From Fonticula alba ATCC 38817 (lineage: Eukaryota; Protista; Nucleariida), in NCBI GenBank assembly GCA_000388065.2, contig KB932210.1: 25,783 bases of DNA. One strand, 5' to 3'. A program made the position numbers and the translations under genes. Under the pieces are notes generated by a model, which was not told the DNA's origin, did no database searches, and saw only the letters and a program-made list of their open reading frames with translations. This document shows positions 1-25,783 of the stretch, in pieces; within the stretch, counting starts at the first letter, position 1, and each line of letters begins with the position of its first letter.

Positions 1-33
1 CCCCCCCCCGCCCCCTGGTCCGACGTCACCCAG

Positions 34-233
34 GCCTGGGCTTCGACGAAATCCGCGCGTGCGTGGCGGCCGGCACGCGCCCCGGGGACGGGCAGCCCGC
101 GCCCGGCCCGGCCGCCATGGCCGACCTGCTGACGATGGCCTGGGACCCGGCCCCCGGGTCGCGCCCGCTGGCCGCCTCCTTCCGCCAGGCCGTCGCCTCG
201 GCGGCCGTCTTCTCGGCCGCCGCTCGCCGCTGA
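34..233 (+). CDS. Last exon of an upstream receptor-like kinase paralogue (gene 0), kinase C-lobe end; rest lies 5' of window
   Basis: CAG acceptor at 31-33 after a C-rich tract. Phase-1 exon reads (G)LGFDEIRACVAAGTRP...MADLLTMAWDPAPGSRPLAASFRQAVASAAVFSAAARR* (TGA 231-233). Aligns with the last exon of gene A (GMCFEEITASVLVGARP...DLLQMAWDSNAHTRPLAASLRQ). Confidence 0.85.
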
Positions 234-330
234 GAGCCCGCCATTCGGGGTGCTGTTCACACATGCTGCCTTTCTCTCTCTCTCTGGGGGGGAGGGCCGG
301 GGCTAAAAGAGGAACAATGGCCCGGTGGGC

Positions 331-334
331 AAAA
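331..334 (-). terminator. Probable Pol III terminator (T4) of tRNA-Val copy 1
   Basis: TTTT on the minus strand 9-12 nt past the tRNA 3' end. The same CTTTTGCCC context occurs at the same spacing after copy 2 (18551-18554). Confidence 0.45.
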
Positions 335-342
335 GAAGTCAC

Positions 343-416
343 TGTCCGAACCAGGACTCGAACCTGGGACATTCTGTGTGTTAGACAGATATGATAACCA
401 TCTACATCATTCGGAC
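343..416 (-). tRNA. trnV(AAC): tRNA-Val (anticodon AAC), copy 1
   Basis: Reverse complement folds as a cloverleaf: acceptor GTCCGAA/TTCGGAC, discriminator A, anticodon stem TCTGT/ACAGA with loop CT-AAC-AC, T arm CCAGG-TTCGAGT-CCTGG, D loop with GG. No encoded CCA, no intron. Confidence 0.95.

Positions 417-2271: not shown

Positions 2272-2273
<2 letters not shown>

Positions 2274-2308
<35 letters not shown>
2274..2308. repeat. Poly-C tract (35 nt) about 190 nt upstream of gene A start
   Basis: Direct read. Homopolymer length may be unreliable. Confidence 0.85.
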
Positions 2309-2309
<1 letters not shown>

Positions 2310-2499: not shown

Positions 2500-3889
2500 A
2501 TGGCGCCACGGCCCCCCCGGCGGGCATCGGCGCCTGCCCATGCGGTGGCCCTCGCCCTCGGGGTGGCCCTTGCCCTTGCGATGGTCCTGGCCCTCGCGCT
2601 TGCCCGGTCCCCGGTGGTGCCGCCGCCGGGCCCCACCCCGCCGATCGACAGCAATCCCGTCTACTTCCAGCAAATGCTCACCCCCTGGACCCACTCGCCG
2701 ACAATGGATCTTTCCGGCCCCCCGGGTCCCGGCCTGGGCACGGCCATGGTCGCGGCCCTCCTGGACCGCGAGTCGGTGCTCCTCTCGCAGCCCTCCCCGC
2801 CCGGCCACCCGTGGGACCTCCGGGTCGGTAGTCTTACATCGGTCGATGCCGGCCCCCCCCTGGCCGAGGCCCTAGTTGCCCCGAGCACGGGCTACACGCC
2901 GCTGGTGACCTTTTCCCCCCAGGGCCCGGTTGTGTCGGCCCTGGCATCCGACAACAAGTCCTTTGCTTCGAATGATCGCTCCTCCTGGCGGCATTTGCCA
3001 CATCAGCGGGTCAGCTGGGTGTTGGCCTCCGTGGCCGACGGCCCCGACCGGGTGGGCATCCTCTATTTCGACACCAGCTCCCACGGCCTCATGCTGGTCC
3101 GCTTCCGGCCGGGCGCGGAGCAGGAAAATGCCCCGGTCAATGTTCTCTCCCTGGCGCAAGGATCCCATCCCCTGGCGGTGGCCGGGCCCATGCGCACTTT
3201 CCTGGTCTACAGCGGGGCTACCGTTTATTGGTTCCAGTTTGATTGGTCCAATTATGGCTTTCCAATCGAGCAGTCCTCCTTCGGCGCCCCGGTGATCGAT
3301 GCCATGCTCGTGCGGGTTTTTTCAGACGCCGCGGTTGAGCGCGTTCTCCTCTTCGGCGATGGCACCATTCAAGTGTGCATCAACTTCCTGTCGCAGCCTG
3401 ACTGTGTCCATCCCCGGCATTTCGCCTTCCCACCTGGCAGTTCGGGCTCCGTGCGTTTGGTCAGGCCGCTGGCCGACACTCCCGTCGGCTGGATCTACCT
3501 GCAAGACATGGACCCCCCGGGCATGCTGTGGCGCGTGTATATCGCCCCCGACGACCCGGATGCCTCGACCATCTGGCAAAGGGTGATTCTCCCGGGGACA
3601 TTGGCCAGCGACCCGTTGAGCCTGGTGCTGCTGGTCGATCGGGATGCCCGTGGCGCCTGGGCCCTGACCAGCTCCTCGCAAACCTACCTGGAGAGCAAGG
3701 ACTTCAACTGCGATGGCGACCCGTCGATCGTGTGCGACGGTGATGCCAGCCCGGCCGGTGGGCCGCCCCAGCCGCTGGGCTTCAAGTGCGCCGCCAACCG
3801 CACCCTGGCGCCCTTCATCCAGCCGGGGACCCTGTGTGCCGGCTGTGCGGACGGCACGTACAACGGCTTCTTCCTGTCCGCTCACACTG
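2500..3889 (+). CDS. Gene A exon 1: signal peptide, beta-rich N-terminal domain, Cys-rich linker
   Basis: In ORF 2401..4311; ends at G|GTGCGT donor (3890). Confidence 0.8.
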
Positions 3890-6800
3890 GTGCGTTCACG
3901 CGCATGTGCGCGTCCCCTGTCTCTCTCTCTTTTTTTCTTTCTTTCTTTTTCTCTCTCTCTCTTTCTTTTTTCTTTCTTTTTTTTTCTCTCTCTCTTTCTT
4001 TTTTTCTTTCTTTCTTTTTCTCTCTCTCTCTTTCTTTTTTNNNNNNNNNNNNNNNNNNNNNNNNNNNNNNNNNNNNNNNNNNNNNNNNNNNNNNNNNNNN
4101 NNNNNNNNNNNNNNNNNNNNNNNNNNNNNNNNNNNNNNNNNNNNNNNNNNNNNNNNNNNNNNNNNNNNNNNNNNNNNNNNNNNNNNNNNNNNNCCCTCCG
4201 CCAACACACCCTTGCAGAGCCACATTGCCTGCCCTGTTCGACGGCACATTGCCTGCAGTGTCTCGCCGATCAGTGTGTCGTCTGCGAAAGCGGGCACCTA
4301 CTGCAAGTTGACACGGGCACCGGCATCACCCAGTGCCTCCCGCAGTGCGAGTCGGCCTACACCGAGGCAGGGACCGTGTGCGTGCCGGCCTCGCCGCCGG
4401 ATTCGCGCGCGTTCGCCGCCTCCACGCACCGGCTGCCCATCGACGCCGGCGCCATTGCCGACTTCCGGCTTCTGGCCCACACGTCGCTCTGCCCGCCGCC
4501 GGAGGGTGGCGGCCCGCCACAACTCCTCAATCCACGGCTGCCCCTCGACCAGCAGCCCCATCACTATCTGGCCTTCGTGGCCTCGTCCAATCTTCCGGCC
4601 CTACTACAACTGGCCCCCGGGCAGCATGCCCCGGAGCATCTGTCCCTCCGGCAGCCCTTCATCTGGCCCTTCGGCGCGAAATTCGTGCACGCATACCTGG
4701 AAACCCGGCCGCCCAGCCCGTGGACCGACGACTCTCACGCCCTGGCCAGCTTCTTCCTGTGCGCCGGCGGGTCCCTGTCCTATGGGCAGATGTTCTGCCA
4801 GGCGGGCACCGGCTTCGTGGCCAACCCCTCGGCTTCCACCTGCCCGGTGGAGGTGGTGACCCAGAGCGAGCTCGTGGGCATCGGCTGCCAAACCATCCGT
4901 CCCTATGGGCCGGACCGGGTGACGGTGCTCACCGACGCCGGGCTGCTCCTCTTCTCCGCCGGCCACACCCAGCCCCCGAGCTATGTCCCCCTGCCGGAGG
5001 TCTTCGAGCACCCGGCGGCCTTCCCCTCGGGGCTCTTCCCCGCCGGCGATGGGCGCGCCTCGTGGATGTTCCTGCTGCGCGACGGGCTGCCCGTGCTCCA
5101 GCCCCTGGATGCCATCGTCCAGGGGCATCCCCAAACGCTCGCCCCTCTGGCGGCCCTGCCCCAGATGCCGGGCTCCTTCGAGCCGGTGGTCCTGCCGACC
5201 GACCGGACCCTCTTCGGGGGGGAGTTTTTCCTGGCCATGCTCACGCCCCCGCACCGAGCCACCGACCTGGTCTCTTGGGAGGTGTGGCATGTGCCGCTGG
5301 GCATGCGGGCCTCCTGGCGCACGGTGCACCTGCCCCACACGCGGCAAACGCTCGGCCCCCTCCCGGCCAATCCCCAGGGGGCCTTCCGGTTCATGGGGCT
5401 CGACCTGCGGCCCCTGGGCGAGCCGCACCACCCGGCGGCGCTGGTCCTCCTGACGCCGCAGCATGTCGGCCTGGCGCTGCTGCACTGCCCGTCGGCCACG
5501 GCCAATGCGCCCTGCTGGCTGCAGCCGGCCCGGTTCGTCGCGCTGGGCACCACCCTCCCGCACGTGGCCCCTGTCAATGTGGTCCTCCTGCCGGCCGGCT
5601 CCCCGGCCGCCGGCTCCCCGGCCGCCGGGGCCTCGGCCGCGGGGCCGGATGTCGGCCTGCTCCTGGCCACCGGGACCGAGGAGCTGCTGGTTGTGTCCGT
5701 GCCGGCCGGGGGCCACTGCCCGCCCGGCACCTTCGGGCCCGGGTGCACGCCCTGCCATGAGCGTTGCCTGTCGTGCAACGGGCCGCTGGCGGCCGACTGC
5801 ACGGCCTGCCGGCGGTCCATCGGGGCCTTCACCAGCCCGGACTCCTGCCTGGACTCCTGCCCGGAGGGGCTGCACGAGCGCGGCCACCTGTGCCTCTGCC
5901 ACGACACCTGCTCATCCTGCGGGCAGGTGCCCGGCTCCGACAGTGCGTTCCACTGCCTGGCATGCGGCGCGGGGCATGCGCTGCCGGCGGGCGCGTCGGC
6001 CGCCGCCGCCTGCCAGCCCTGCCACGCCACGTGCGCCGAGTGCCGCACCCCTGGCGACCCGGGCTCGTGCATCGGATGTGCCGCCGGCCACTTCCTCCAT
6101 CAGGGCCTGTGCTTGGAAAGGTGCCCGGCCGGCAGCTGGGGCGATGCCGCCAGCCAAACTTGCGCCCCCTGCCCCGGGCCATGCAGCTCCTGCTCCTCGG
6201 CCAGCGACTGCACTGCCTGTGCCGCCGGGCACTTCCTCAATGCCAGCCACATGTGCCAGCCCTGTGACAGCTCCTGCACCGCCTGCACCGACGGGGCCAC
6301 CTGCACCATCTGCCGGCCGGGGATGATCTTCCTGGACCCGGACCCGGGCGCGCCGTCCCTCTGCGGCAGCACCTGCCCCCCGGGCGAGTATGTCGCGTTC
6401 ACCCGGTGCGCCGCGTGCGTTGCTTCCTGCGCCCTGTGCGCCGGCGGGCCGGACCAGTGCCGGGTGTGCGCCGAGGGGTTCCGCTGGGCCGGGCCCGCCC
6501 CGGGCCCCGGCGGCACTGGCACGTGCGTCGCCTGTGAGCCTGGGTGCGCCTCCTGCACGAGCGCCGCATGTCTGTCCTGCGAGGCGGGCCTCCTGCTGAC
6601 GGCGGCCGGCGCATGTGTCGGTGCCTGCCCGGCCGGGTCGTTCAGCAACGGCGAGTCGTGCCAGCCGTGCGACATTAGTTGCGCCGCCTGCGCCGACGGC
6701 CAGCCGGACCAGTGCACGGACTGTGGCCCGGGGCTGGAACTTGTCGAGGTGGCCCCCGGTGTCGGCACCTGCGAGTCGGGCTGCGCAGAGGGCGAGTACC

Positions 6801-9706
6801 TCCAGGGGACGGACTGCCTGCCCTGCGACGCGGCCTGCGCCACGTGCAACGGCCCCACGGACAAGGACTGCTGGCGGTGTGTCGGGGCCGTGCTCCAGGG
6901 CGGCGACTGCGTGCAGGCCTGCGCCGCCAGGCATGTGGCCGTGGCCGGCCGGTGCCTGCCGTGCCATGTCTCCTGCGCCGAGTGCATGGGCACTCGGAGC
7001 ACCGAGTGCCTGCCGGACTGCGCACCCGACTTGCTGGCCCTGCCGGCCGGGCAGTCGCCCACGCGCTGCGTGCCGGCCTGCCCGGCCGGGCACCACACCT
7101 CGGCGGCCGGGTGCGCCCCCTGCGGGGCGCACTGCGCCAGCTGCCCGGAGTCGAACGACACATGCGCCCTGTGCGAGCGCGGGTGGCTGCTGGACGCGCC
7201 GAGCTGCGTGACCGAGTGCCCCCCCTCCTCGGTGGCGCAGGGCGGGCTGTGCGCCACCTGCCACGCCACCTGCGCCACGTGCTACGGGCCGGAGCCGGGG
7301 CACTGCCTGTCGTGCGGCGGCTCGATGTACCTGCACATGGATGGGACCTGCCTGGGCGCCTGCCCGGCCGGGTTCTTTGGCCAATCGGGCGCCTGCCTCC
7401 CATGCAGCGCCGCCTGCGCCGAATGCCTCGGGCCCGGCAGCGGCCAGTGCTCGGCCTGCCCGCCGGGCAGCCTCCTCCACCAGGGCACCTGTGTCACCCT
7501 CTGCCCGGCCGGGTACTTCGCCGACGCCGGCCGCGTGTGCCGGGCCTGCGATGCCGAGTGCCTGACCTGCTCCGGCCCGGGCCGGTGCTCCTCCTGCCGG
7601 GCGGGCCTGCTGCTGACCGGGGCCGGGGGCTGTGTGGCCGGCTGCCCGGCCGGGTGGCTGGCCTGCCCGCCAACCGGCCGGTGCGATGCCTGCCCCGGGG
7701 GCTGTGCCGCCTGTCAGGCGGACGTCCAGGCCGGCTGGGGCTGCACCGCCTGGTGCACTGCCTGCGACCGGGGGCTCGTCCGGACCGCTCGGACGGGGGC
7801 CTGCGCCGGGGCCTGCCCGCCGGGGGAGTTCCTGGCCGCCGGGTCGGCCGACGCCTGTGCCCCCTGCCATGCCGGCTGCGGCACATGCTTCGGCACGGCC
7901 TCCCACTGCACGTCCTGCCCCCTGGCCGAGCAGTGGCTGGACGTCGAGGCCGGAGCCTGCGTGGCCGGCTGCCCGGCCAGCGAGCTGGCCCCGGCCGAGC
8001 TCCCCTCCCCGGGTGCCGGCCGGCCGGCGCGCGTGTGTCTCGCCTGCCCGAAGCACTGCGAGCGCTGCGCCGCCGGGCCCGACATGTCGCCGTGCGACCT
8101 GGCCCCGGGCGGGGCGCTCGCCTGCCCGGCCATCGACACATGCGCCCAGTGCCTGCCCGGGTTCCTGCTGCTCGGCGGGGCCTCCTGTGTGGGCGAGTGC
8201 CCGGTCGGGTACTTCCCGCAGGAGGACGCCCGCCCGCCGGGGTGCCTGCCCTGCCACGCCCGGTGCAAGGCCTGCTCCGGCCCCGGCCCCGGGGACTGCA
8301 CTTCGGTGGCCGGCCCCTCTCGCGGCCGACTCGGTGCGGGCGCCGTCCCTTCCCTCCTTCCGCCCCTCTGCCCATGCCTCTGACACGCGCCTTCTCCTGC
8401 CCCGGCTCCGGGCCACACGCGCCCGTATTTTCCCGGCCCCCTGCCGGGGCAGCCCTCGGCCTGGGCCTCGGCCTGGGGCTCCTGCTGCTGGTCCTGCTGC
8501 TGCTGCTGGTGGTCCTCCTCTTCCTGCGCCTGCGTCGCCGGCGCCGGGCCCCGAGCAAGGTGCGTCCCTGCTGGCCGGCGGTCGCCGCCGCTCACTCTGC
8601 CCTCCGAGCACATGTGTTTACTGACACCACGCCGCACAGGCCCGCGACGATGAGGACGCCACCGTCATGAACACCATCGTGGAGCTGTCGCTCCCGGGCA
8701 GCATCCTGGTGAGCATCGCCAGCGACTTCTCGCCGCTCAACGAGGATGCGCTCGGTGCCGGGACCCAGGCGTCGGTCTACGCGGCGCGCGCCGTCGGGGC
8801 CGGCATCTCCGACCGGCTGGGCTGCCCGGGCACCGTGGCCATCAAGCAGCTGAAGGCCGAGCGTCTGACCCCCACGCAGGTGACCCTCTTCCAGAACGAG
8901 GTGGCGCTGATGTGGCTGCTGCGCGACGCGCCGAACGTCGTCCGGCTGTACGGCTACAGCGAGCAGCCGCCGGCCATCGTCATGGAACGCTACCAGACGG
9001 ACCTGGCCACGCTGCTGCACTCGGACGTCCCCCTGGACCAGGGCACCATCCTGGACATCGCCCAGCAGTGGGCCTCCGGGCTGGAGGCCATGCACGCGCA
9101 GGGGATCGCCCACCGCGACCTGAAGCCGGGCAACGTGTTTGCCAGCCAGCGCCCGGATGGCTCCTGGACGGCGGCCCTCGGCGACCTGGGCACCTCGCGC
9201 AACCTCAACACCGACCGGTCGTCGACACTGGTGACCGAGGCGCCGGAGCTGAACGCCCTGACGGCGCGGTACGCGGCGCCCGAGGTGCTGGCCGCCTTCC
9301 AGCGCCGGCGCCCGCTGGACCCGGAGCTCCTGCTCCCGGCGGACATCTTCAGCGCGGCCATCATGCTGTGGGAGTGCCTCAACCGCACACTCCCCTGGGC
9401 CGGTACGTTCCCTTGGGCCAGCCGGCGGGCCGCGGATGTGGTGTGACCCATGGACTGACTGCTGACACCTGCCTCCAACGGCGCCCCCCCCCCCCCCTGC
9501 CCTGGCAACCAGGCATGTGCTTTGAGGAGATCACGGCCTCTGTGCTGGTCGGTGCCCGGCCCGACTTGGAAGGCATGCCGGCCGGCTTGCTGGCCTCCTT
9601 TGGGGACCTTCTGCAGATGGCCTGGGACTCGAATGCCCACACGCGGCCGCTGGCCGCCTCCCTCCGGCAGAAGGCCGCCATGGCGGCCCTCGGCCCCGGC
9701 GGCTGA
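2500..9706 (+). CDS. Gene A: receptor-like TKL-type Ser/Thr kinase with furin-like Cys-rich ectodomain. Exons 2500-3889, 4218-8333, 8453-8559, 8640-9402, 9513-9706 (about 2189 aa)
   Basis: All four introns are GT..AG and phase-consistent; exon sum 6570 nt = 2190 codons. N-terminal hydrophobic stretch (AVALALGVALALAMVLALALA), roughly 20 CxxC/FU repeats, TM (ALGLGLGLGLLLLVLLLLLVVLLFL) followed by RRRRR. Kinase motifs GAGTQA, VAIK, HRDLKPGN, DLG, ARYAAPE, DIFS. The start could alternatively be the in-frame ATG at 2401. Confidence 0.88.
3920..4040. repeat. TC/T low-complexity microsatellite in gene A intron 1
   Basis: Only C and T for about 120 nt, running into an N gap. Confidence 0.9.
4041..4193. 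other. Assembly gap (153 N) in gene A intron 1
   Basis: N run. Confidence 0.99.
4218..8333 (+). CDS. Gene A exon 2: FU pair, second beta-rich domain, long furin-like repeat array
   Basis: TTGCAG acceptor at 4216-4217, open frame of ORF 3713..8383, GTGCGG donor at 8334. Confidence 0.88.
8453..8559 (+). CDS. Gene A exon 3: transmembrane helix and basic stop-transfer
   Basis: CAG acceptor, phase 1; about 25 hydrophobic residues then RLRRRRRAPSK; AAG|GTGCGT donor. Confidence 0.85.
8640..9402 (+). CDS. Gene A exon 4: juxtamembrane and kinase subdomains I-X
   Basis: TACTGAC branch point and ACAG acceptor; canonical kinase motifs; G|GTACGT donor. Confidence 0.92.
9513..9706 (+). CDS. Gene A exon 5: kinase C-terminus
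   Basis: CCAG acceptor; GMCFEEIT...AWDSNAHTRP...; TGA at 9704-9706. Confidence 0.88.
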
Positions 9707-10023
9707 GACGCCCCGGGCTGGGCCCTGCCCCGCTTGGGCCCGGGAAAAATACACCCCCACACCCTGTCCGTCCGCCCGTCCGGGCACCGGTTGTCATTCG
9801 CGCCGGCACTGCTCGCGAGAGGGGGAACACGTGCAGTCCGGCTGCGGGCCCGCCGTCGCGGCGGCGAAGCCCCCTTGTCGCCGTGCCTCGCCGGCTGCCT
9901 TTCTGGCTCCCCCCTCCCCTCTCTCTCTCCGTGTCTCATTCACTCGCTGGCGGCTGTGGGCATGGCCTGGGGATGGGCGACCGCGGCCGGGCCGCCCAGG
10001 GCCTCAGTCCCCCCCCCCCCTCT

Positions 10024-10048
10024 ACACACACACACACATATACACACG
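10024..10048. repeat. (CA)n microsatellite between the convergent 3' ends of genes A and B
   Basis: acacacacacacacatatacacacg, direct read. Confidence 0.7.
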
Positions 10049-10333: not shown

Positions 10334-10539
10334 TCACATAAGGTCCACGCACAGGGCACGGAAGTGCGAGGCCACCGGGCGGGCGTGCGGATCCTGGACC
10401 CAGGCCGCCTGGATGGCGTCCATGGCCGGGCCCGGGTTCGCGGTGGGCGGCGTGGCGGCTCGCTCGCTGGCCAGGACCAGCGACAGGTCCGGGCGGATGC
10501 CGGCCCCGACGCTGGAGCTGATGCTGGCGAACTTGAAGC
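10334..10539 (-). CDS. Gene B last exon (kinase C-terminus)
   Basis: CCCAG acceptor; GFKFASISSSVGAGIRPDL...AWVQDPHARP...LM*. Confidence 0.85.
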
Positions 10540-16500: not shown

Positions 16501-16578
16501 GCGGCTCCATGCACACGAGGCAGGCCCCGTCGGCCTGGCACACCCGGCACCCGGGCTCGGCGCAGGCGGCGCACGTGC
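10334..16578 (-). CDS. Gene B: receptor-like TKL-type kinase paralogue (non-RD, HCD). Exons 16578-12277, 12121-12012, 11693-11413, 11259-10778, 10539-10334; 5' end lost in gap
   Basis: Introns are GT..AG and phase-consistent. FU repeats colinear with gene A; TM LALGLGVGLGLLFLLVLGLVVFFLVW; kinase motifs GAGTQA, VAVK, HCDLKPGN, DLG, ARYAAPE. Two compensating frameshifts near 15785 and 15575. Confidence 0.85.
10778..11259 (-). CDS. Gene B kinase exon (subdomains IV-X)
   Basis: ORF 10734..11258; GGCAG acceptor, G|GTGCGT donor at 10777. Confidence 0.9.
11413..11693 (-). CDS. Gene B juxtamembrane and kinase N-lobe exon
   Basis: AADLDADASATVLNTIMELSLPG...VAVKRLK...QNEIALMW; phase-2 donor TG|GTGCGT at 11412. 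Confidence 0.9.
12012..12121 (-). CDS. Gene B transmembrane exon
   Basis: GACTAAC branch point (about 12184-12190), CTGCAG acceptor, AAG|GTGCGG donor. Confidence 0.85.
12277..16578 (-). CDS. Gene B ectodomain exon (FU pair, beta-rich domain, furin-like repeat array)
   Basis: ORFs 15578..18019 and 12185..15475 share one frame. About 200 nt between them reads best in the adjacent frame. GTACGT donor at 12276. Confidence 0.75.
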
Positions 16579-16702
16579 CTGCCAGGGCCCGGGCGCGGCG
16601 GCAGCAGTGGCGGAGGCGGTGGCCGGGGCAGCAGCAGCAACAGGAGGTAGCAGAGACAACAACAGCGGCGACAACAGCGGCGACAACAGCAGCGACAACA
16701 GC

Positions 16703-16712
16703 NNNNNNNNNN
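16703..16712. other. Assembly gap (10 N) joining gene B 5' region to the middle of + strand gene D
   Basis: N run; the two flanks belong to different genes on opposite strands. Confidence 0.95.
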
Positions 16713-18282
16713 CGGCCCCACGGACAAGGACTGCTGGCGGTGTGCCTCCGGCGTCCTGCAGGGCGGCGACTGCGTGCAGGCCTGCGCCGCCAGGCATGTG
16801 GCCGTGGCCGACCGGTGCCTGCCGTGCCATGTCTCCTGCGCCGAGTGCGCCGGGGTCCGATCGACCGAGTGCACCGCCTGCCCCGGGGGGCTGCTGCCGC
16901 TGCCGGCCGGGCAGCCGCCCATGTGCTGTGTGCCGGCCTGCCCAGTGGGCTACCACACCTCGGCGGCCGGGTGCGCCCCCTGCGGAGCACACTGCGCCGG
17001 CTGCCCGGAGCAGGCGGGCACCTGCGCCCTGTGCGAGCGGGGCTGGCTGCTGGACGCACCAAGCTGCGTGACCGGCTGCCCGCCCTCCTCGGTAGCCCAG
17101 GGCGGGCTGTGCGCCAACTGCCACGCCTCGTGCGCCACATGCTTCGGCCCGGCGCCCGGGGCACTGCCTCACCTGCAGCCCGGCGTCCCCGCTGCTGGTG
17201 GGTGGCACCTGCGCCCGGCGCGTCGGGCCCGACCTCAACCAGTGCACTGCCTGCCCCGATGGCAGGGTCCTGTCGGGTGGGGTCTGCCTGGGCGGCTGCC
17301 CGGCCGGGCTGTTTGCCCAGGAGGGCATCTGCCAGGCCTGCCACGGCTCCTGCCAGACGTGTGACCGGGCGGACGCCTGCACCGGCTGCCCGGCGGAGAC
17401 CCTGGCCCAGCCGGGCGGGCTGCGTCCCGGGACCTGCCCGGCCGGGTGGGCAGGCTGCGCCGCCGCCGGCCGCTGCGTCGCCTGCCCGGAGCACTGCGCC
17501 GCATGCGCGGCCGGCGGCGACTGCGCGCCCGTATGTACCGTCTGCGCGTACGGCCACCTCCTGTGGGAGGGGGCCTGCCACCTTTCCTGTCCCGCCGGGC
17601 GGCTCGCCGACCCGGCGAGCGGGGCCTGCATGCCCTGCGAGGCCGACTGCCGGACCTGCTCCGGGCGCGGGGACACATGCACATCCTGCCACTCCGGGGT
17701 GCTGCCCATTGAGGAGTCCACCTGCGCGGCCTCGTGCTCGGGGGGGGGGGGGGGGGCTTCCCCCCGGCCGGGGGGTACTGCCCTGCCTGCCCGGCCGACT
17801 GCGGCCAGTGCGAGGCCCCCGCTCCTCCCCCCCCCCCCCAGGAGAGCGAGGGGGGGCATGGCTGCACGCTCGGCCCCGACGGGCGGCTGTCCTGCCCGAG
17901 GGTGGCCTCCTGCACCCGGTGCAAGGGCGGGCTCCTCCTGCTGGGCGGGGCGGCCTGCGTGCGCGCCCGTCCGGCGGGCGCCTTCGCGGAGCACGATGCC
18001 CCCCCCCCCCGCAACCCAACTAACACACGCCAAGCATCTCTCGCCCCCCGCCCCCTCGGCCGTGGCAGGGGCCCGAGCATGGAGGACCTCCTTCGGGCGG
18101 TGGAGGCCGGCCGACGGCCATCTCTGGCGGCGCCGCCCCCCGGGCCCGGGCCCCAGCTGCTGGCGGGCCTCTCCTGTCGGTGACCTGGGCGGCCGACCCG
18201 GCCAGCCGGCCCTCGGCCGTTGTCTTCCGGCAAAAGTGCGCCTCGGCCGTGGCGCGCCGCTGCACGGCCACGCCCCCCCTGA
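16713..18282 (+). pseudogene. Gene D: degenerate paralogue; FU repeats fused to the last intron remnant and last kinase exon, TM and main kinase exons absent
   Basis: 16714-17160 is highly similar to gene A 6851-7290. Frameshifts near 17158, 17740-17756, 18069 and 18170; Cys-to-Arg changes at 17423 and 17968; in-frame deletion near 17215. CTAAC (18020) and CAG (18066-18068) precede an exon reading SMEDLLRAVEAGRRP...LSVTWAADPASRPSAVVFRQKC. Confidence 0.75.
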
Positions 18283-18562
18283 CGTTGTTTTTACAAATAC
18301 ATCCCCCCCCCGCCCGCCGGGGTGTGGGTTGGGCCTTTCTCCCCTCCCTGCCCGGGGCGCCTTCTTCCGGGGTGGCTCTCTCTGTTTGTTGCCGCGCGGT
18401 CCCTCTCCACCGGGGTGGGGGGCATCCAGACACCCCCGGAGGTCGCTGCGCGGGGATGCACGCACCCCCGCGGGCGGATGCGCACCGCAGCCTGGTCCTT
18501 TTCCAGGTGCACAGACACGGACGCAGAGCTACCCGCGGTCCCCCCCGGGCAAAAGAAAGCGC

Positions 18563-18636
18563 TGTCCGAACCAGGACTCGAACCTGGGACATTCTGTGTG
18601 TTAGACAGATATGATAACCATCTACATCATTCGGAC
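18563..18636 (-). tRNA. trnV(AAC): tRNA-Val (anticodon AAC), copy 2
   Basis: 74/74 nt identical to 343-416. Confidence 0.95.
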
Positions 18637-19533
18637 TGGGGGCTTGCGCTGCTTGGGCATTTTTCATTGGCCGGCTTTTCCCGGCGACCGCGCCGTCCGT
18701 TGGCTTCCCCCCCAGCGCGCCCTGGTCTTTTGGAACCCCGGGACACCACGCGCACTGACATGAGGGGGAATAATAAAAAAATATCCAAGCATATGGAACA
18801 TAAAAAATGCACATTATTCGAGCCGCCGCCATTGCCGCTGCCGGTCGCCGTCCCGGAGGGCGCCGACACCCTCGAACGGCGTGTCCCGGCGTCGGTGCGG
18901 ACAGCCGCACATGGCCTTTCCCTTGCGTGGCCATTGTCCGGTCCCCGGCCCCGGAGGTCGACCAAACGGCCGCCAGCCACACCCGCGGCCGGTTAAGCCC
19001 GGCCCCCCCGCGTGACCGGCGCCGAGGCAGTTAATGCGGGCCTCCTCCCGCGCGTGATTGCCCGCCGTTGGTCGTCCGTTTGTTTTCTTTTTGCCTCCCC
19101 TGCCCGCCGAGGCCGCGCCCCTTTTCCCGGAGGCAGCGTGTGCGCCCCATGGTCGGGGCATGCACGCGCCTGCGTCCACCCGCGTCCGGATTTCTTTCAC
19201 GGGGGGGATTTTTCCCGCGGCCGGCATGGCCTGGGCCCGGGCGCGACTGGGCCGGCACGCGATTTGGTCCGGCCCCGACGTGCGCGCGCGCCCTCGGGCC
19301 CTGTTGTTTCCTGGTCCTGTAGTGTCAAGGCCCGAAGCCAAGCAGGGGGCCAAGGGGCCTGCGATACCGAACGACACCTCATCAAACACGGGCAGGGTGC
19401 GCCTGTGGCGGAACACCAACCGGGCACATGGGGCTCGGGGCACGCATGCCGCAAAGCACACATCGGGGGCCCGGGCACGCGCCGGCTGGGTGCCCGCTTG
19501 CTGACGCGTCCTGCGGGGCCCTGCCGTGCCCTT

Positions 19534-19564
<31 letters not shown>

Positions 19565-19924: not shown

Positions 19925-19926
<2 letters not shown>

Positions 19927-19999
<73 letters not shown>
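19927..19999. repeat. Poly-C tract (73 nt) ending 23 nt before gene C start
   Basis: Direct read. Length may be unreliable. Confidence 0.8.
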
Positions 20000-20001
<2 letters not shown>

Positions 20002-20022
20002 CGCCTGACTCGACCATCCCCC

Positions 20023-21773
20023 ATGGGTCGACATTGCATACCGTGGTTTCGGCAGCTGCCTCTGCTGCTGCCGCTGCTGCTGCCGCTGCTGCTGCCGCTG
20101 CTGCTGCCGCTGCTGCTGCTGTTGTTGGCCCCGGCCACGCACGGCCATGTGGCCAACGCCCGGGCCCTGTACACAGACCCCCCGGCCGTGGGCTTCTGCC
20201 AGGCCCCGGCGCCCCTGTTCAGCCGGGCGGACGTCGAGACGGCCGTCGGCTTCTTCAGCCTCACCCTCGGCGGGGCGCGAAGCCAGCTGGCGGCCCTGCA
20301 GCCCACCGGCGAGGTGCTGCTCTTCCAGCAGTCCGCCCTGCACTTCAACCTGCATGACGACCCGCGTGTCGGGGCCCTGCTCCAGGACGTGTGCTCTTCC
20401 GATCTGGCGGACGTCGAGACGGCCGTCGGCTTCTTCAGCCTCACCCTCGGCGGGGCGCGAAGCCAGCTGGCGGCCCTGCAGCCCACCGGCGAGGTGCTGC
20501 TCTTCCAGCAGTCCGCCCTGCACTTCAACCTGCATGACGACCCGCGTGTCGGGGCCCTGCTCCAGGAGGACGCGCCGGTGGCGCTGGGAGGCCCCTTGGA
20601 CCCGGCCCCCGGGCCCTGGCGCTTGCTGCTGGCCGAGGCCCCGGCCGGGCCCGAACTGGCGGCCCTGGCCGACGGCGAGTTCTGCCTCTTCCTCAATCAC
20701 CAATGGTCGTGCGTGCAGGCCAGGCCGGAGTCGGCCGGCGCCGGGCCGGCCACCTACCTGGCGCACATGGTCCCCGGGCCCGGGCGCATGAATGTGCTGT
20801 TCCACCGCCCGGGGGCCGGGCAGCTGGAGCTCCTGCAGCTGGGCGCCGCGCCCGGCTGGAAGGCCTTCCCGCTGAGCCTGCCGACCGGCGGCCCGGCCCC
20901 CGGGGCCGCCTTCCACCCGGACGGCCTGGTGCTCGTGTGGCACGGCGCCGGCAACTGGTTCGCGCATGTGGACTATGCCGATGGACAAGTCCCGGCCGCC
21001 TGGCGCGCCGACCTGCCCGGGGGCCTGGTCGATGTGGTGTCCCTGCCGCTGGTGTCCAACCAGCCGGAGGGCCTGGTCCTGGTCCTGGACACCGGGGCCA
21101 TCCGCGTGTGCTCGACACTCCAGGGGACCAACTGCCTGAGTGAGTGGCAGGCCCTGGACCCCGGGGCCCTGGGGCCCGGGGCCCAGCTTCGCATCCATGA
21201 CACCCCGCGGAACTTCCTGGACCCGGGTCGCCTGGTCGAGTGGGTGGTCCTGCGCGATGGCCACTCCGAGCGCCTCTTCACCATGAGCCTTGTCCAGGGC
21301 ATGGCGAATCCCCTGAGATCGGAAGAGCGTCGTGTACCTGGGGCCCGGGGCCCAGCTTCGCATCCATGACACCCCGCGGAACTTCCTGGACCCGGGTCGC
21401 CTGGTCGAGTGGGTGGTCCTGCGCGATGGCCACTCCGAGCGCCTCTTCACCATGAGCCTTGTCCAGGGCATGGCGAATCCCCTGCGCCTGATGGCCCTGC
21501 CTCCGGGCAGTCCGGCGGCCGGCCAGCTGCGGCTCTTCCAGGCGGCCACCGGCCCCGGCGATTCCACCTGGTCCCTGACCGATGGCCGGGTGCTGCTCCT
21601 GGTGGACAGCCTCTTCTGTCAAGCGGACTCGACCATTGTGTGCCCCTCGCTCAATGGGGCTGCCCCGCCGCCGGGGGGGTTCGCCTGCGCCCCGAGGCGC
21701 GGCCTGTCGCCGCTGCACGTGCCCGGGGCCCTGTGCAGCGGCTGTGCCGATGGGGCCTTCATGATGGACACCG
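20023..21773 (+). CDS. Gene C exon 1: signal peptide, beta-rich N-terminal domain, Cys-rich linker (contains two adapter-derived artefactual duplications)
   Basis: MGRHCIPWFRQLPLLLPLLLP... signal peptide. The frame is continuous once 21316-21484 is removed. Ends LCSGCADGAFMMDT G|GTGCGT at the same position and phase as gene A intron 1. Confidence 0.8.
20386..20405 (+). other. Illumina TruSeq adapter remnant GACGTGTGCTCTTCCGATCT between duplicated segments 20226-20387 and 20406-20567
   Basis: Exact 20-nt match to the known adapter 3' end. Confidence 0.95.
21316..21336 (+). other. Illumina TruSeq adapter remnant AGATCGGAAGAGCGTCGTGTA between duplicated segments 21168-21315 and 21337-21484
   Basis: Exact 21-nt match to the known adapter read-through sequence. 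Confidence 0.95.
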
Positions 21774-21912
21774 GTGCGTGGTCTGTGCTTGGCGTCGCCT
21801 GCCCGCGTGTTGCCCGGCGTGCTGCCTCTGAGCATCATGCCTGCCCGCCGCGCCATCCGGTCTGGCACTTCCCTTGTCCTTCTCACTTTCTTCTCCCATG
21901 ACTTTCTTTTCT

Positions 21913-22000
21913 CATCACCTTATTCTCGCATCACTTTATTCTCGGATCACTTTATTCTCGCATCACTTTATTCTCACATCCTCTCATCCTCTCATCCTCT
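21913..22000. repeat. Intronic minisatellites in gene C intron 1: 4 x 16-nt CATCACTTTATTCTCG and 3 x CATCCTCT
   Basis: Direct read; units start at 21913, 21929, 21945, 21961, then 21977, 21985, 21993. Confidence 0.85.
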
Positions 22001-22076
22001 GATTCTCTTTTCTTCTTTCGCGCTCTTCTTCCTCCCTGCCCCGCCCCTCCCCCCGGAACACCGCCACCACGCTCAG

Positions 22077-25000
22077 ACTGCACCAACTGCCCGGGCACCG
22101 GGTGCGCCACCTGCAATGCCACCGGCTGCCTTGCCTGCCAGGAGGGGCTCCTCCTGCTGACCGGGCCGGGGCTCGGGGCCGGGGCATGTGTGGCCGCCTG
22201 CCCGGCCGGAGCCGAGCCGGCCCCCGGGACCTCGCGCTGCCAGCCCCCGCCGGGGGCCCCGCCGCCGCCGGTGGCCGCCATCACCAGCATGCGGCCCCTG
22301 GTGCCGGCGGACCCCCAGCAGCCGGCCATCCCGGTGGTCTTCCCCTCGCGCATGCACATCGACAATGGCCAGTGCATGCTCTACCCGGCCACCATGGCGG
22401 ATGTGCAGTTTTCCGGCAACGCGGTGGCCCTGCCCACCGGCGGGGCCCGGCCCCTGTGGGTCCGGCCCGACCCCGAGCAGCCGGGCGCGCTGCTGGTCCA
22501 GGAGATGCCCTGCATCGGGCCCCTGCCCTCGGGACTGGGCGCAGCCTCGGTCGTCGAGCTGCCCATGGTGGAGGACGATGACCGGCGGCCCACCACCCGG
22601 CTGGTGACCTGCGCCGGCGATGGCACGCTCCACATGACCACGGTGGTGTGCCCGGCCGACTCGGCCGAGCAGCCATGCGCCCTGGCCTCGGCCGCGGCCC
22701 AGACGGAGCTCATCGCCACGGCGGCCGGCTGCCTGGAGGTGGCCCCCCTGGCGCCGGGGCTGGTGGCCGTGCGCCTGGCCAATGAGCAGGTGCTCCTGCT
22801 GCAGGTCAGCTTGGAATCCGGAGCCATGCGCCAGGCCAGCCTGCCCCGGGCGCCGGCCCTGCCGGCCCTGCTGCCGGGCATGCGGCCCGGGCCGGATGCC
22901 CCGGAGGCCGGGGAGTGGCTCTTCCGGGGGTTTGTCCCGGGAGCCGGGCCCCCCGGCGGGGCGGCCTACCCGGTGGAGCTGCTGCTGGCGCGCGACTCGC
23001 GTGTCCTGGCGGCCGAGCATCTGCCGGCTCTGCGGCTGGGCGGGGCGTCGGCCGGGCTCGGGCTCGGGCCGCTGGCCCCGGTGCTGGTGCCGGACGTCCG
23101 GCCCGCCTGGGGCTCCGCCTCGGACCCCCCGGCCACCGGGGAGCTGATGCTGTCCGGGCTGGTGGCCGGCGTGCCGGCCGGGGCCCCGGCCCGGTGGGTG
23201 GTCATGCAGCCGCCGCTCGGGGCCCACCGGGCCGGCCGGGCCGCCGGCCTGCCGGTGAATGTCGAGCTGCTGGGCCATGTGCCGGCGGCCGGCGGGCCGG
23301 CAGGCAGCCTGGGCCAGGTCCCGGCCCACCGGACCCTGGCCGTCAGCCTGCCCTGGTCCGAGGGCACCCCGGCGGCCCTGTTCCTGCTGACCCCGGAGCA
23401 TGTGGGCGTGGCGCTGGTTCGCTGCGACTCGAGCCCGGACCGGGTGTGCTGGCCGCAGCCGGCCCGGTTCTTCCGGCTGCCCGGGCCGCTGGCCGGGCCG
23501 CTGGACCGCGTGTCGCTGCTGGCCGTGGCGCACGACTGGGCCTTCGACGACCCGGAGCACCGGCCGGCCTCGGCCATTGTCCTGGCGGCGGCCGGGCTGC
23601 CGCTGCCGCTGGTCCTGTCGCTGGCGCTGGACCCCTGCCCGGAGGGGCACTACGCGCCGGGGTGCCTGCCCTGCGGGCCCGGGTGCGCCCGGTGCACGGG
23701 CCCCGGCCCGGAGGACTGCACCGTCTGCCGGGCCCAGCTGGCCGAGGCGCCGGGCCGGTGTCTGGCCGCCTGCGACCGGCCGGCCCTGCCGGTGCCCGGG
23801 TCGTCGACCTGCGCCTGCGAGCCCCTCTGCCAGGAGTGCGATGCGGCCCTGGACCCGGCGGGGCTCGTTTACCGGGCGGTGTGCCGGGCCTGCGTGCCGG
23901 GGGCCGCCCTGCATCCCGAGGCCGACCCGGAGGCCGGCCAGTGCCTGCCCTGCGACGGGTCCTGCGCCGAGTGCTCGGTGCCCGGGGACCTGGCCGGGTG
24001 CACGGCCTGCCCGGCCGGCTCCGGCCGGCTGCTCCACCAGGGCCGCTGCATGGATGCCTGCCCGGGGGGCTTCTTCCCGGCGGCCGACCTGCCCGAGTGC
24101 CTGCCCTGCCCGGAGGCCTGTCACGAGTGCGCCGGCCCGGGCGCCTGTGGCCGCTGTGCGCCGGCGCACTTCTGGGACCCGGCGGCCGGCCGGTGCTCGG
24201 CCTGCCACGGGTCGTGCGCCTCGTGCGCCGGCCCGGGCGTCTGCGCCACCTGCCGGCCGGGGCTGGTGTTCATGGCCCCGGACCCGGCGGTGGAGGCGCC
24301 CTGCGGGGCGGCCTGCGCGCCGGGCGAATTCCCCGGGCCCGACCGGTGCACCGCCTGCCATGCCTCGTGCGACCTGTGCGCCGGCCAGGCCGACCGGTGC
24401 CTGGTGTGCGCGGCCGGGCATCGGTGGGCCGTCCCCCCGGGCGCCGGGGCCGCCGGGCTGTGCGTGCCCTGCGCGGCCGGGTGCGCCTCGTGCACCGGGG
24501 CCGACCGGTGCCTGGCCTGCCAGCCGGGGCTCCTGCTGGCCGGCGATGGCACATGCGCCACGGCCTGCCCGGCCGGCGAGTACAGCAACGGCGAGTCCTG
24601 CCAGCCGTGCGACCTGTCGTGTGCCACGTGCGCCGGCGACGGCGCCGACCAGTGCACCGGCTGCGCCGCCGGGCTGGAGTTCCACCCAGTGGACCAGGCC
24701 CGGGGCACTTGCGAGTCCATCTGCCCGCAGGGCCAGTACCTGGACCTGGCCACGGAGGCGTGCCTGCCCTGCAGCGGGGCCTGCGCCACGTGCAACGGCC
24801 CGACCGATCGCGACTGCTGGCGCTGCCAGGGGGCCATGCTGCAGGGGGACCAGTGCGTGCAGGTGTGCGCGGCCAGGCACCACGCCGCCAATGGCCGGTG
24901 CCTGCCCTGCCATGCCTCCTGCGAGGCGTGCACCGGGGTCCGGAGCACCGAGTGCACCGCCTGCCCGGGGGACCTGCTGGCCCTGCCGGCCGGGCAGACC

Positions 25001-25783
25001 CCGGGCCGGTGCGTGGCCGCCTGCCCGGCCGGGTACAACACCGGGCCCGGGGGGTGCGCCCAGTGCGGCGCCCATTGCGCCAGCTGCCCGGCCGATGTGG
25101 CCGCCTGCCGGCTTTGCGACCGGGGCTGGCTGCTGGCCGGGCCGGCATGCGTGGCCAGCTGCCCGGCCGGGTCCTCGCCCCTGGGCGGCCAGTGCACCAC
25201 CTGCCACGGGAGCTGCCTGGCCTGCTTCGGCCCCGGGGCCCAGGAGTGCCTGGCCTGCGCGCCCGGCAGCCCCTTCCTGGTGGATGGGGCCTGCCTCGGC
25301 GCCTGCCCGGGCGGGTCCTTCCCCAGTGGCCCGGCGTGCGCCCCCTGCCACGGGACGTGTGCCACCTGCACCGGGCCCTCGGGGGCCGAGTGCACCGCCT
25401 GCCCGCCCGACCGGGCCCTCACCCCCGGCGGGGCCTGCCTCGCCTCCTGCCCGCCCGGCGAGTACCCCGCCCAGGAGTCCGGCGGCCGGGTGTGCCGGGC
25501 CTGCGATGTCGCCTGCGAGACCTGCACCGGGCCCGGGCCGGGCCACTGCACGTCCTGCGCCCCGCCGGCACTGCTCGCAGGTGGGGCCTGTGTCGACGCC
25601 TGCCCGGCCGGGCACTTCGTGTGCCTGGCGTCGCGCCGGTGCGAGCCCTGCCCGGCCGGGTGCGCCGAGTGCCAGGAGCAGGGCACCTGCCAGGCGGCCT
25701 GCACCGCGTGCGAGGCCGGCCTTCTCCTGTCGGGCACGGCCTGTATGGCAGCCTGCCCGGCGGGACACTTCGCCCCGGCCGGG
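22077..25783 (+). CDS. Gene C exon 2 (partial, runs off window): FU pair, beta-rich domain, furin-like repeat array
   Basis: CTCAG acceptor, phase 1 (DCTNCPGTGCATC...). Frame appears open to the window end (read through to about 23880, spot-checked at the end); absent from the ORF track, probably because no stop is reached. Repeats colinear with gene A (NGESCQPCD, CNGPTDRDCWRC, RSTEC, RGWLL). Confidence 0.88.

What the first reader, a model, noticed from the sequence alone, without database searches (positions are those of the whole stretch)
34..25783. Dense array of giant CxxC/furin-repeat receptor kinases with variable tips: candidate recognition-receptor repertoire
Seen: five paralogues in 26 kb. 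Kinase and FU stalk are conserved, while the two membrane-distal beta-rich domains are barely alignable between A, B and C. One copy is decayed. Known: CxxC-rich ectodomain plus TM plus kinase is the design of Entamoeba transmembrane kinases, which resemble Giardia VSPs. Birth-and-death clusters with variable distal domains are typical of recognition receptors such as plant RLKs and Dictyostelium tgr loci. Inference: a diversifying cell-surface sensing family for kin, prey or pathogen recognition in this protist.
Basis: partly seen in the sequence, partly recalled or inferred. Interest (0 to 1): 0.75.

Follow-up and report, generated by a model that had tools for sequence, protein, structure and literature searches.

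The report
Fonticula double-propeller receptor kinase array
This stretch of the social amoeba Fonticula alba (a sister of fungi) holds one complete gene and four partial or damaged copies from a species-only family of about 60-90 giant surface receptor kinases, each with its own very old pair of propeller-shaped sensor heads on a cysteine-rich stalk; what the heads sense is untested.

Summary
The window (Fonticula alba, contig C10) carries pieces of five paralogues. Only gene A (2500-9706, NCBI "TKL protein kinase", 2189 aa) is complete. E is a last exon only. B has lost its first head at the 16703-16712 gap and has two frameshifts. D is a decayed fragment. C runs off the end and carries two Illumina-adapter assembly artefacts.

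Each receptor reads signal peptide, seven-bladed beta-propeller, Cys-rich linker, second propeller, about 18 CxxC repeats, one TM, Ser/Thr-type kinase. Identity rises from 26-41% in the heads to 44-51% in the stalk and 68-72% in the kinase.

A head-1 profile found 62 proteins among 1.84 billion. All 52 checked are F. alba.

The "diversifying" reading is only partly supported. Synonymous sites in the heads are near saturation, so the heads look old rather than recently diverged. Stalk segments, and probably kinase exons, are kept alike by gene conversion, with abrupt switches to 93-100% third-position identity inside one exon.

Ligands are unknown and dN/dS is not measurable from paralogues. 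I found no paper describing the family. The scan has already found this family on other DNA of the same genome, with the same reading.

The parts
3..230 (+). E: last (C-terminal kinase) exon of the upstream paralogue; stop at 231-233
   Evidence: 52.7% identical to A's last exon by tblastn (49% in the MAFFT alignment). 100% match to the C-terminus of P0026, residues 3398-3462.
343..416 (-). tRNA-Val(AAC), copy 1, just downstream of E's last exon
   Evidence: ARAGORN. 96.7% identical, flanks included, to the copy at 18547-18638. At least 28 copies genome-wide.
2500..9706 (+). Gene A, complete receptor kinase (NCBI 'TKL protein kinase', 2189 aa). Exons about 2500-3889, 4217-8333, 8452-8559, 8640-9404 and 9515-9703.
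   Evidence: Exact mapping of P0001 on the window. Third-position GC of 0.8-0.99 in frame.
2689..3819 (+). A head 1: seven-bladed beta-propeller (residues about 64-440), followed by a short conserved Cys knot
   Evidence: AlphaFold2 pLDDT 79, pTM 0.83. Foldseek and VIA-align give generic seven-blade propellers, Z 16-18. No Pfam family in 30 members.
4041..4193 (.). Assembly gap inside intron 1 of gene A (intron about 3890-4216, CT-rich microsatellite)
   Evidence: The flanking exons join collinearly, as in C and in P0001.
4418..5572 (+). A head 2: second beta-propeller (residues about 531-915). No detectable sequence homology to head 1.
   Evidence: AlphaFold2 pLDDT 82, pTM 0.81. Generic propeller matches. 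hhalign of head 1 against head 2 gives probability 0.4%. No Pfam family in 27 members.
5573..8332 (+). A stalk: about 18 CxxC (furin-like) repeats, 140 Cys in 920 residues
   Evidence: Motif count and about 48-residue period. Sub-threshold Pfam hits to VSP, Furin-like_2 and GF_recep_IV.
8452..8559 (+). A transmembrane exon: hydrophobic segment, then an Arg-rich stop-transfer
   Evidence: Only two hydrophobic peaks in the protein, the signal peptide at residues 13-35 and the TM at 1836-1860.
8640..9703 (+). A kinase domain (two exons): VAIK, HRDLKPGN, DLG, APE. An RD, Ser/Thr-type kinase.
   Evidence: Pkinase 103.8 bits against a cut-off of 31.7. Nearest solved structures are B-Raf and Raf-1, E 4e-16. 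Motifs read.
10337..16702 (-). Gene B, 5'-truncated at the gap. Exons about 10337-10537, 10776-11258, 11412-11693, 12012-12119 and 12278-16576. Non-RD kinase (HCDLKPGN). Head 2 has two frame changes and an in-frame stop at 15578-15580.
   Evidence: The NCBI model P0074 (1697 aa) starts at an internal Met (16405) and bridges the frameshifts with 56- and 58-nt 'introns' that delete two near-invariant Trp positions.
16703..16712 (.). Assembly gap that separates B (minus strand) from D (plus strand); not continuous
   Evidence: The left flank is a microsatellite intron of B. The right flank starts in mid-repeat of D's stalk.
16714..18282 (+). D: decayed copy. Stalk remnants at 16714-17160 (82% aa identity to A), 17153-17689 and 17863-18009 lie in three frames. 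There is no TM or kinase exon. A last-exon remnant at about 18078-18282 carries a frameshift.
   Evidence: tblastn of P0001, translations and homopolymers G17, C13 and C12 at the breaks.
18563..18636 (-). tRNA-Val(AAC), copy 2, downstream of D's last-exon remnant
20023..25783 (+). Gene C, 5' part (runs off the window). Head 1 at 20023-21772, intron 1 at about 21774-22057, then linker, head 2 and stalk at 22058-25783.
   Evidence: The DNA beyond the window is withheld.
20388..20567 (.). Assembly artefact in C: adapter (20388-20405) plus an exact duplicate of 20226-20387
21316..21484 (.). Assembly artefact in C: adapter (21316-21336) plus an exact duplicate of 21168-21315. It causes a false +1 frameshift.

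Best explanation
The window is a segment of a tandem array of Fonticula alba 'double-propeller' receptor Ser/Thr kinases.

Each intact member is a type I membrane protein. From the outside in, it has a signal peptide, a seven-bladed beta-propeller, a short Cys-rich linker, a second unrelated-in-sequence propeller, a rod of about 18 CxxC repeats roughly 900 residues long, one TM helix and a TKL-like kinase. The kinase is either RD (HRD, gene A) or non-RD (HCD, gene B).

Inferred mechanism: the two membrane-distal propellers bind extracellular ligands that differ between paralogues. The rigid disulphide-rich stalk holds them far from the membrane. Ligand-driven clustering or rearrangement then activates the cytoplasmic kinase.

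Evolution, shown here: the heads are ancient and gene-specific. The stalk is repeatedly homogenised between paralogues by gene conversion, and the kinase exons of the C10 subgroup appear to be as well. The array also sheds copies (D, perhaps B). The contrast between variable tips and a conserved stalk and kinase is therefore produced largely by old head diversity combined with concerted evolution of the signalling end. It is not demonstrated positive selection.
For: Architecture:
- P0001 maps exactly on gene A.
- Pkinase scores 103.8 bits. Catalytic motifs are intact.
- There are two hydrophobic segments only, and 140 Cys in the stalk.
- Both heads fold confidently as propellers.

Family size and restriction:
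- Head 1 has at least 88 genomic matches and head 2 at least 64. None of the head-1 matches has an internal stop, and only one head-2 match does. By my own estimate, about 6 stops per 430 random codons would be expected at 75% GC.
- The head-1 HMM found 62 proteins in 1.84 billion, with a sharp cut-off. All 52 checked are F. alba.
- Kinase relatives drop from 46-89% identity (F. alba) to 30% or less outside it.

Old heads:
- Third-position identity is 0.35-0.55 against 0.37 expected by composition.
- The highest head-1 identity among 69 domains is 0.60.

Conversion:
- In three independent pairs, one exon switches abruptly from 25-40% aa identity and 0.45-0.55 third-position identity to 90-100% and 0.93-1.0. 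Identical-codon use for the same amino acid rises from about 0.55 to 0.94-1.0.
- A's kinase exon is 88-93% identical in DNA to at least 10 paralogues whose heads give no DNA match.
- The head-to-kinase distance ratio is 9.6 in A's subclade, against 2.9 in another.

Gene death: D and B's frameshifts.
Against: - No ligand, expression or activity data exist.
- The stalk's furin-like assignment is below Pfam cut-offs and has no PDB sequence match.
- Propeller matches are generic, so they do not point to a ligand class.
- Head and kinase trees agree on the major subfamilies. Conversion therefore acts within whole-gene lineages and does not erase them.
- Strong codon bias (GC3 0.95) inflates synonymous identity, although the 'identical codon given same amino acid' measure controls for this.
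- The assembly is a draft with adapters and gaps, so some frameshifts in B and D may be sequencing errors.
Confidence: 0.7

Rival explanations
1. One reading: a birth-and-death recognition repertoire whose heads are driven apart by positive (diversifying) selection for kin, prey or pathogen recognition.
For: - The heads are the most divergent part.
- The family is large and clustered.
- There are dead copies.
- About half of the kinases are non-RD (HCD 26 against HRD 22 motif matches). From my own knowledge, that trait marks plant pattern-recognition receptor kinases.
- The propeller scaffold residues are conserved while the rest varies.
Against: - Synonymous sites in the heads are near saturation, so the divergence is old rather than fast and recent.
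- No closely related head pairs exist on which to measure dN/dS.
- The conservation of the stalk is explained by conversion, and probably that of the kinase too.
- There is no second strain and no functional data.
Confidence: 0.2
2. A largely decaying, functionally redundant array. Head divergence reflects relaxed constraint, and many members are pseudogenes.
For: D is dead and B is disrupted as assembled. A's head 1 has lower third-position GC (0.70-0.89) than other coding parts.
Against: - Head matches are open across the family, although about 6 stops per 430 codons are expected by chance by my estimate.
- Invariant Cys, Trp and Arg scaffold positions are kept.
- The heads fold confidently as propellers from family alignments.
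- Catalytic motifs are intact.
Confidence: 0.06
3. The pattern is an assembly artefact: collapsed or chimeric repeats in a draft genome.
For: There are adapter insertions with exact duplications in C, two gaps, and a misjoin-like B/D junction.
Against: - The near-identical stalk tracts are 90-97% identical, not 100%. They involve loci on different contigs (L040 on C46 and L048 on C10). They also show clean codon-level structure.
- NCBI models exist for A, B and E.
- Coding periodicity is strong.
Confidence: 0.04

Closest known systems
Entamoeba histolytica transmembrane kinases (e.g. PATMK; PMC2211552, PMC2880585)
   Same: Amoebal type I receptors with a signal peptide, a CxxC-repeat ectodomain (25 repeats in PATMK), one TM and a kinase. 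They form a large multigene family. PATMK acts in phagocytosis, which makes it a plausible functional analogue for a bacterivore.
   Different: - No propeller heads are reported for the TMKs.
- No Entamoeba kinase appeared among relatives.
- The Fonticula kinase clade and heads are species-restricted.
- Kinship is not shown.
EGFR/ErbB and insulin-receptor ectodomains (L1 - furin-like Cys-rich - L2 - Cys-rich)
   Same: Two globular ligand-binding domains separated by a Cys-rich furin-like module, then a further Cys-rich region, a TM and a kinase. There are weak hits to GF_recep_IV and Furin-like_2.
   Different: - The heads are seven-bladed propellers, not L-domain beta-helices.
- The stalk is about 18 repeats long.
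- The kinase has the Ser/Thr-type HRDLKPGN loop.
- Fonticula has no tyrosine kinases (PMC4342544).
Plant receptor-like kinases in tandem arrays, including non-RD pattern-recognition receptors
   Same: A lineage-specific expansion in clusters, with variable ectodomains on a conserved Ser/Thr kinase, frequent non-RD kinases, pseudogenes, and recombination between neighbours.
   Different: The ectodomains are unrelated (LRR, lectin and others against propellers plus CxxC stalk). Kinase kinship to the IRAK/Pelle group was not tested. No immune function is known here.
Propeller-bearing receptor kinases of animals (MET/RON Sema-PSI; ROS1/Sevenless YWTD)
   Same: A beta-propeller ligand-binding head followed by a Cys-rich module, a TM and a kinase.
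   Different: Those are tyrosine kinases with Sema or YWTD propellers. No Sema or YWTD family hit was found here. This looks like a convergent design.
Dictyostelium tgrB1/tgrC1 kin-recognition locus
   Same: A clustered, highly diverse set of surface proteins in an aggregative amoeba.
   Different: Tgr proteins are Ig-like (IPT/TIG) with no kinase, and their diversity is allelic between strains. Here the diversity is between paralogues, and strain data are lacking.

Membership tests
Eukaryotic protein kinase (Pfam PF00069/PF07714) | Profile match above the curated cut-off | tested here: met
   A scores 103.8 bits against 31.7. B scores 84.6 bits. The whole protein P0001 scores 99.1 bits.
Eukaryotic protein kinase (Pfam PF00069/PF07714) | Catalytic Lys (VAIK), catalytic-loop Asp and Asn, Mg-binding Asp (DFG), APE | tested here: met
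   A has VAIK, HRDLKPGN, DLG and APE. B has VAVK, HCDLKPGN, DLG and APE.
TKL kinase group | Groups with TKL kinases rather than other groups | tested here: inconclusive
   The nearest solved structures are B-Raf and Raf-1 (E 4e-16), and NCBI names the protein 'TKL protein kinase'. No group-level phylogeny was made, and outside relatives are only 30% identical or less.
Tyrosine kinases / receptor tyrosine kinases | Catalytic loop of the HRDLAARN or HRDLRAAN type | tested here: not met
   The loop is HRDLKPGN or HCDLKPGN. Suga et al. found no tyrosine kinase in Fonticula (PMC4342544).
Furin-like / growth-factor-receptor Cys-rich repeats (PF15913, PF14843) | Profile match above the cut-off | tested here: inconclusive
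   A scores 22.6 against 28 and 19.5 against 29.5. B scores 25.8 against 28 and 28.2 against 29.5. Many paralogues carry these Pfam labels precomputed. There is no PDB sequence match.
Furin-like / growth-factor-receptor Cys-rich repeats (PF15913, PF14843) | Regular CxxC-containing disulphide-rich repeats | tested here: met
   55 CxxC motifs and a repeat of about 48 residues. Cys makes up 15.2% of residues 916-1835.
Entamoeba TMK family | Signal peptide, CxxC ectodomain, TM and kinase architecture | tested here: met
   compared with PATMK as described in PMC2211552.
Entamoeba TMK family | Sequence kinship of the kinase or ectodomain | tested here: inconclusive
   No Entamoeba protein appeared among hits at E<=1e-10. 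That search is limited by shared words and by length, and no direct comparison was run.
Giardia VSP (PF03302) | Profile match above the cut-off | tested here: not met
   28.3 and 24.1 bits against a cut-off of 31.4.
EGFR / insulin-receptor L-domain receptors | Receptor L domains (beta-helix) flanking the furin-like region | tested here: not met
   The heads have no Pfam match and fold as beta-propellers.
WD40 / Sema / YWTD / FG-GAP propeller families | Sequence profile match to a named propeller family | tested here: not met
   0 of 57 head sequences match any such family at E<=0.1. The structural matches form a flat list of generic seven-blade propellers, Z 16-18.
Non-RD receptor kinases (plant PRR-like class) | Arg before the catalytic Asp is replaced | tested here: met
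   B has HCD. There are 26 HCDLKPGN and 22 HRDLKPGN matches genome-wide. This is a functional class, not a family, and IRAK/Pelle kinship was not tested.

The most novel reading that the evidence does not exclude
The double-propeller kinases could be an innate recognition repertoire of a fungal sister lineage. Each ancient head pair would read a different microbial or conspecific surface molecule (prey discrimination, defence, or partner recognition during aggregation). The non-RD half of the family would signal as plant pattern-recognition receptors do, and gene conversion would keep one shared signalling module. That would be a receptor-kinase 'immune or kin-sensing' system evolved independently in Holomycota, whose fungal relatives have no receptor kinases.
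Probability: 0.2. Interest if true: 0.8.

Novelty: new variant of a known kind. Interest (0 to 1): 0.6.

Why it matters
No receptor-kinase domain architectures were found in fungi (Kiss et al. 2019, PMC6733946), and Fonticula has no tyrosine kinases (PMC4342544). Yet this closest amoeboid relative of fungi, which feeds on bacteria and aggregates into fruiting bodies, has built its own large receptor Ser/Thr kinase system. That system has a head design (two orphan beta-propellers) seen nowhere else in 1.84 billion proteins.

It is a clean natural example of modular receptor evolution, with old, diverse sensors on a signalling end kept uniform by gene conversion. It also gives concrete candidates for prey sensing or cell-cell recognition in an independent origin of aggregative multicellularity.

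On the practical side, the public assembly here contains adapter-derived false duplications, and gene models that hide frameshifts as introns.

Tried and rejected
- dN/dS per domain was not computed. Head paralogues are at 20-40% aa identity with third positions near the compositional expectation, so dS is saturated.
- Fetching whole neighbouring genes for codon-level kinase comparison failed. Kinase conversion therefore rests on DNA identities and tree distances.
- The look-up of encoding contigs had no record for P0001.
- The ESM Atlas gave only a weak, uninformative hit for head 1 (0.77).
- Identity correlation between head 1 and kinase was about 0. I do not use it as evidence of decoupling, because head identity is saturated. 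Trees show that the major subfamilies are congruent.
- Counting contig-label changes on the trees was uninformative, with 20 observed against about 21 in shuffles for both trees.
- hhalign found no head 1 to head 2 homology, so an internal duplication origin is unsupported.
- A PDB sequence search of the stalk found nothing.
For C, the adapter-plus-duplicate stretches were simply left out and the pieces were analysed separately.

Full report
**Identity and layout**

The window is G000:C10:391377-417159 of a 31.3-Mb genome. It is 57-84% G+C per kilobase, mostly above 70%. A word search with exon 2 of the first large gene returned a 100% identical NCBI protein, 'TKL protein kinase [Fonticula alba]', 2189 aa, on a 619,120-base contig. 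The organism is therefore Fonticula alba, whose genome is reported at 70.3% G+C (PMC10752896).

Coding regions stand out by third-position G+C of 0.9-0.99. I used tblastn of gene A's exons against the window and frame-by-frame translations. Together these resolve five paralogue-derived units:

- E: last exon only, 3-230 (+).
- A: 2500-9706 (+).
- B: 10337-16702 (-).
- D: 16714-18282 (+).
- C: 20023-25783 (+), running off the end.

Two tRNA-Val(AAC) genes (343-416 and 18563-18636, both on the minus strand) follow the last exons of E and D.

**The gaps, tested first**

Gap 4041-4193 sits in intron 1 of A, between CT-rich microsatellite flanks. Exon 1 ends after the conserved Cys knot of head 1, and exon 2 starts with the Cys-rich linker. 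The fully sequenced gene C shows the same arrangement, and the NCBI model joins the exons the same way. Nothing coding appears to be missing.

Gap 16703-16712 is a true discontinuity. Its left flank is a microsatellite intron of B on the minus strand. Its right flank starts in mid-repeat of a plus-strand stalk, which belongs to D. B's first head and 5' end, and D's 5' half, are simply not in the assembly.

**State of each copy**

A is intact, with five exons that map exactly to P0001.

B's head 2 needs two frame changes (about 15790 and 15575) and has an in-frame stop at 15578-15580. The NCBI model P0074 starts at an internal Met and bridges the shifts with 56- and 58-nt 'introns'. These delete two Trp positions that are nearly invariant in the family alignment. 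They therefore look like hidden frameshifts, whether real or sequencing errors.

D has stalk remnants in three frames. It has no TM or kinase exon: only about 70 bases, including a C12 run, separate the last stalk repeat from a last-exon remnant, and that remnant is itself frameshifted. D is the decayed copy.

C looked frameshifted and internally duplicated, but both features are artefacts. Illumina adapter sequence lies at 20388-20405 and 21316-21336. Each is followed by a 100% identical copy of the preceding 162 or 148 bases. With those stretches left out, the frame is continuous.

**Protein architecture**

P0001 has two hydrophobic segments only, a signal peptide (residues 13-35) and a TM (1836-1860) followed by an Arg-rich stop-transfer. 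The stalk (residues 916-1835) contains 140 Cys, and the whole protein 55 CxxC motifs, most of them in the stalk with a period of about 48 residues, which gives about 18 repeats.

Pfam gives Pkinase well above its cut-off. VSP, Furin-like_2 and GF_recep_IV score only below cut-off, and the stalk has no PDB sequence match.

The kinase of A has VAIK, HRDLKPGN, DLG and APE. B has HCDLKPGN, so it is non-RD. The catalytic loop is of the Ser/Thr type. The nearest solved kinases are B-Raf and Raf-1 (E 4e-16). Suga et al. found no tyrosine kinase in Fonticula (PMC4342544).

**The heads**

The two heads have no Pfam match in any of 57 family sequences. I built alignments of 30 and 27 paralogous heads and predicted structures with AlphaFold2. 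Head 1 gave pLDDT 79 and pTM 0.83. Head 2 gave pLDDT 82 and pTM 0.81. Both are all-beta with about 28 strands.

Foldseek and VIA-align return a flat list of seven-bladed propellers for head 1, including bacterial PLL/PHL/CV39L lectins, WD40 proteins and integrin alpha, at Z 16-18. No family stands out. Head 2 also matches generic propellers, more weakly.

A profile-profile comparison finds no head 1 to head 2 homology. The conserved positions are a few Trp and Arg, plus a C-terminal Cys knot in head 1.

**Family size and range**

Head 1 has at least 88 genomic matches and head 2 at least 64, at 24-46% identity. They cluster on C10, C5, C9, C11 and other contigs. Only one head-2 match has an internal stop, and no head-1 match does. 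By my own estimate from base composition, about 6 stops per 430 random codons would be expected at 75% G+C. At least 19 kinase hits lie across 305-575 kb of C10.

A head-1 profile searched against 1.84 billion representative proteins found 62 hits. Of these, 61 are at E<=1e-10, with nothing weaker. Fifty-two were checked by name or by near-identity to this genome, and all are F. alba.

Kinase relatives fall from 46-89% identity in the kinase-bearing F. alba proteins to 30% or less elsewhere. That search sees only proteins of 1204-3830 aa.

HRDLKPGN occurs 22 times in the genome and HCDLKPGN 26 times.

**Mode of evolution**

Within the window, identity rises from the heads (26-41%) through the stalk (44-51%) to the kinase (68-72%).

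The heads are old. Their third-position identity is 0.35-0.55, against 0.37 expected from composition. No head-1 pair among 69 exceeds 60% identity. That protein set came partly from a library collapsed at 50% identity, which hides close pairs.

By contrast, three independent paralogue pairs switch abruptly inside one exon. These are A against C10:363.7 kb, L036 against L052, and L040 against L048, the last pair on different contigs. Each goes from 25-40% aa identity and 0.45-0.55 third-position identity to 90-100% and 0.93-1.0. Identical-codon use for identical amino acids rises from about 0.55 to 0.94-1.0. That step in synonymous similarity is the signature of recent gene conversion or recombination, not of protein-level constraint.

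A's kinase exon is 88-93% identical in DNA to at least ten paralogues whose heads give no DNA match. D's stalk remnant is 85% identical in DNA to A.

Head-1 and kinase trees agree on the major subfamilies, so whole-gene duplication built the family. However, the head-to-kinase distance ratio is 9.6 in A's C10 subclade, against 2.9 in another subclade and 3.2 overall. This fits local homogenisation of the kinase.

The receptor-repertoire part stands. The family is large, clustered and species-only, with open, scaffold-conserving but otherwise very different heads, with dead copies, and with many non-RD kinases.

The 'diversifying selection' part is not shown. The data fit long-kept head diversity plus concerted evolution of the signalling end at least as well. 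Kin, prey or pathogen recognition is possible. Entamoeba PATMK, a CxxC receptor kinase, acts in phagocytosis (PMC2211552). That function remains untested here.

**Literature and earlier scan notes**

I found no paper that describes the family. Kiss et al. only count 323 Ser/Thr kinases in Fonticula and found no receptor-kinase architectures in fungi (PMC6733946). Searches combining Fonticula with receptor-kinase terms found nothing relevant. The genes themselves are in GenBank under automatic names.

Earlier follow-ups of this scan, on other windows of the same genome, reached the same reading: a double-propeller receptor kinase, about 65-95 members, conversion of stalk and kinase. I reached these points independently before reading those summaries, apart from the organism lead, which I verified.

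**Limits**

C's 3' end is withheld. Codon-level proof of conversion is available for the stalk only. For the kinase it is inferred from DNA identity and tree distances.

Noticed in passing
window 20388-20405 and 21316-21336: Illumina adapter sequence is embedded in the public assembly. Each insertion is followed by an exact duplicate of the preceding 162 or 148 bases. Together they create a false 60-aa duplication and a false frameshift in gene C.
   Followed up: yes
window 2274-2308 and 19927-19999: Long poly-C tracts (C35 and C73) lie just upstream of the start codons of A (2500) and C (20023). Shorter C and G runs sit in introns and at D's breakpoints (17740-17756, 17827-17839, 17999-18010). 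They could be a promoter or 5'UTR feature, or a slippage hotspot.
   Followed up: partly
window 343-416 and 18563-18636; G000 C10 469337, 470721, 521445, 528403, 534295: tRNA-Val(AAC) has at least 28 near-identical copies in the genome. Several sit shortly after the last exon of a receptor kinase gene, which suggests the tandem duplication unit carried a tRNA gene.
   Followed up: partly
window 15515-15572 and 15765-15820 (minus strand): The NCBI model of gene B (P0074) places 58- and 56-nt introns here. These remove two near-invariant Trp positions of head 2. They look like frameshifts papered over by the gene caller.
   Followed up: yes
window 11259-11411 (minus strand) compared with 8640-9404: B has an intron inside the kinase domain, between the N-lobe and the C-lobe. 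A lacks it, so intron presence varies among paralogues.
   Followed up: partly
proteins P0030, P0034, P0039, P0045 (445-478 aa, other contigs): Several annotated F. alba proteins consist of little more than a head-1 propeller, with no stalk, TM or kinase. They may be secreted or decoy versions of the receptor head, or truncated gene models.
   Followed up: no
window 3890-4216, 16577-16702, 21774-22057: Intron 1 of A, B and C is a low-complexity microsatellite (CT-rich or GCN repeats). In A and B it is exactly where the assembly broke.
   Followed up: partly
window 9707-10336: A (RD kinase) and B (non-RD kinase) lie tail to tail, with only about 630 bases between their stop codons. B is the only inverted member in this stretch.
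   Followed up: partly
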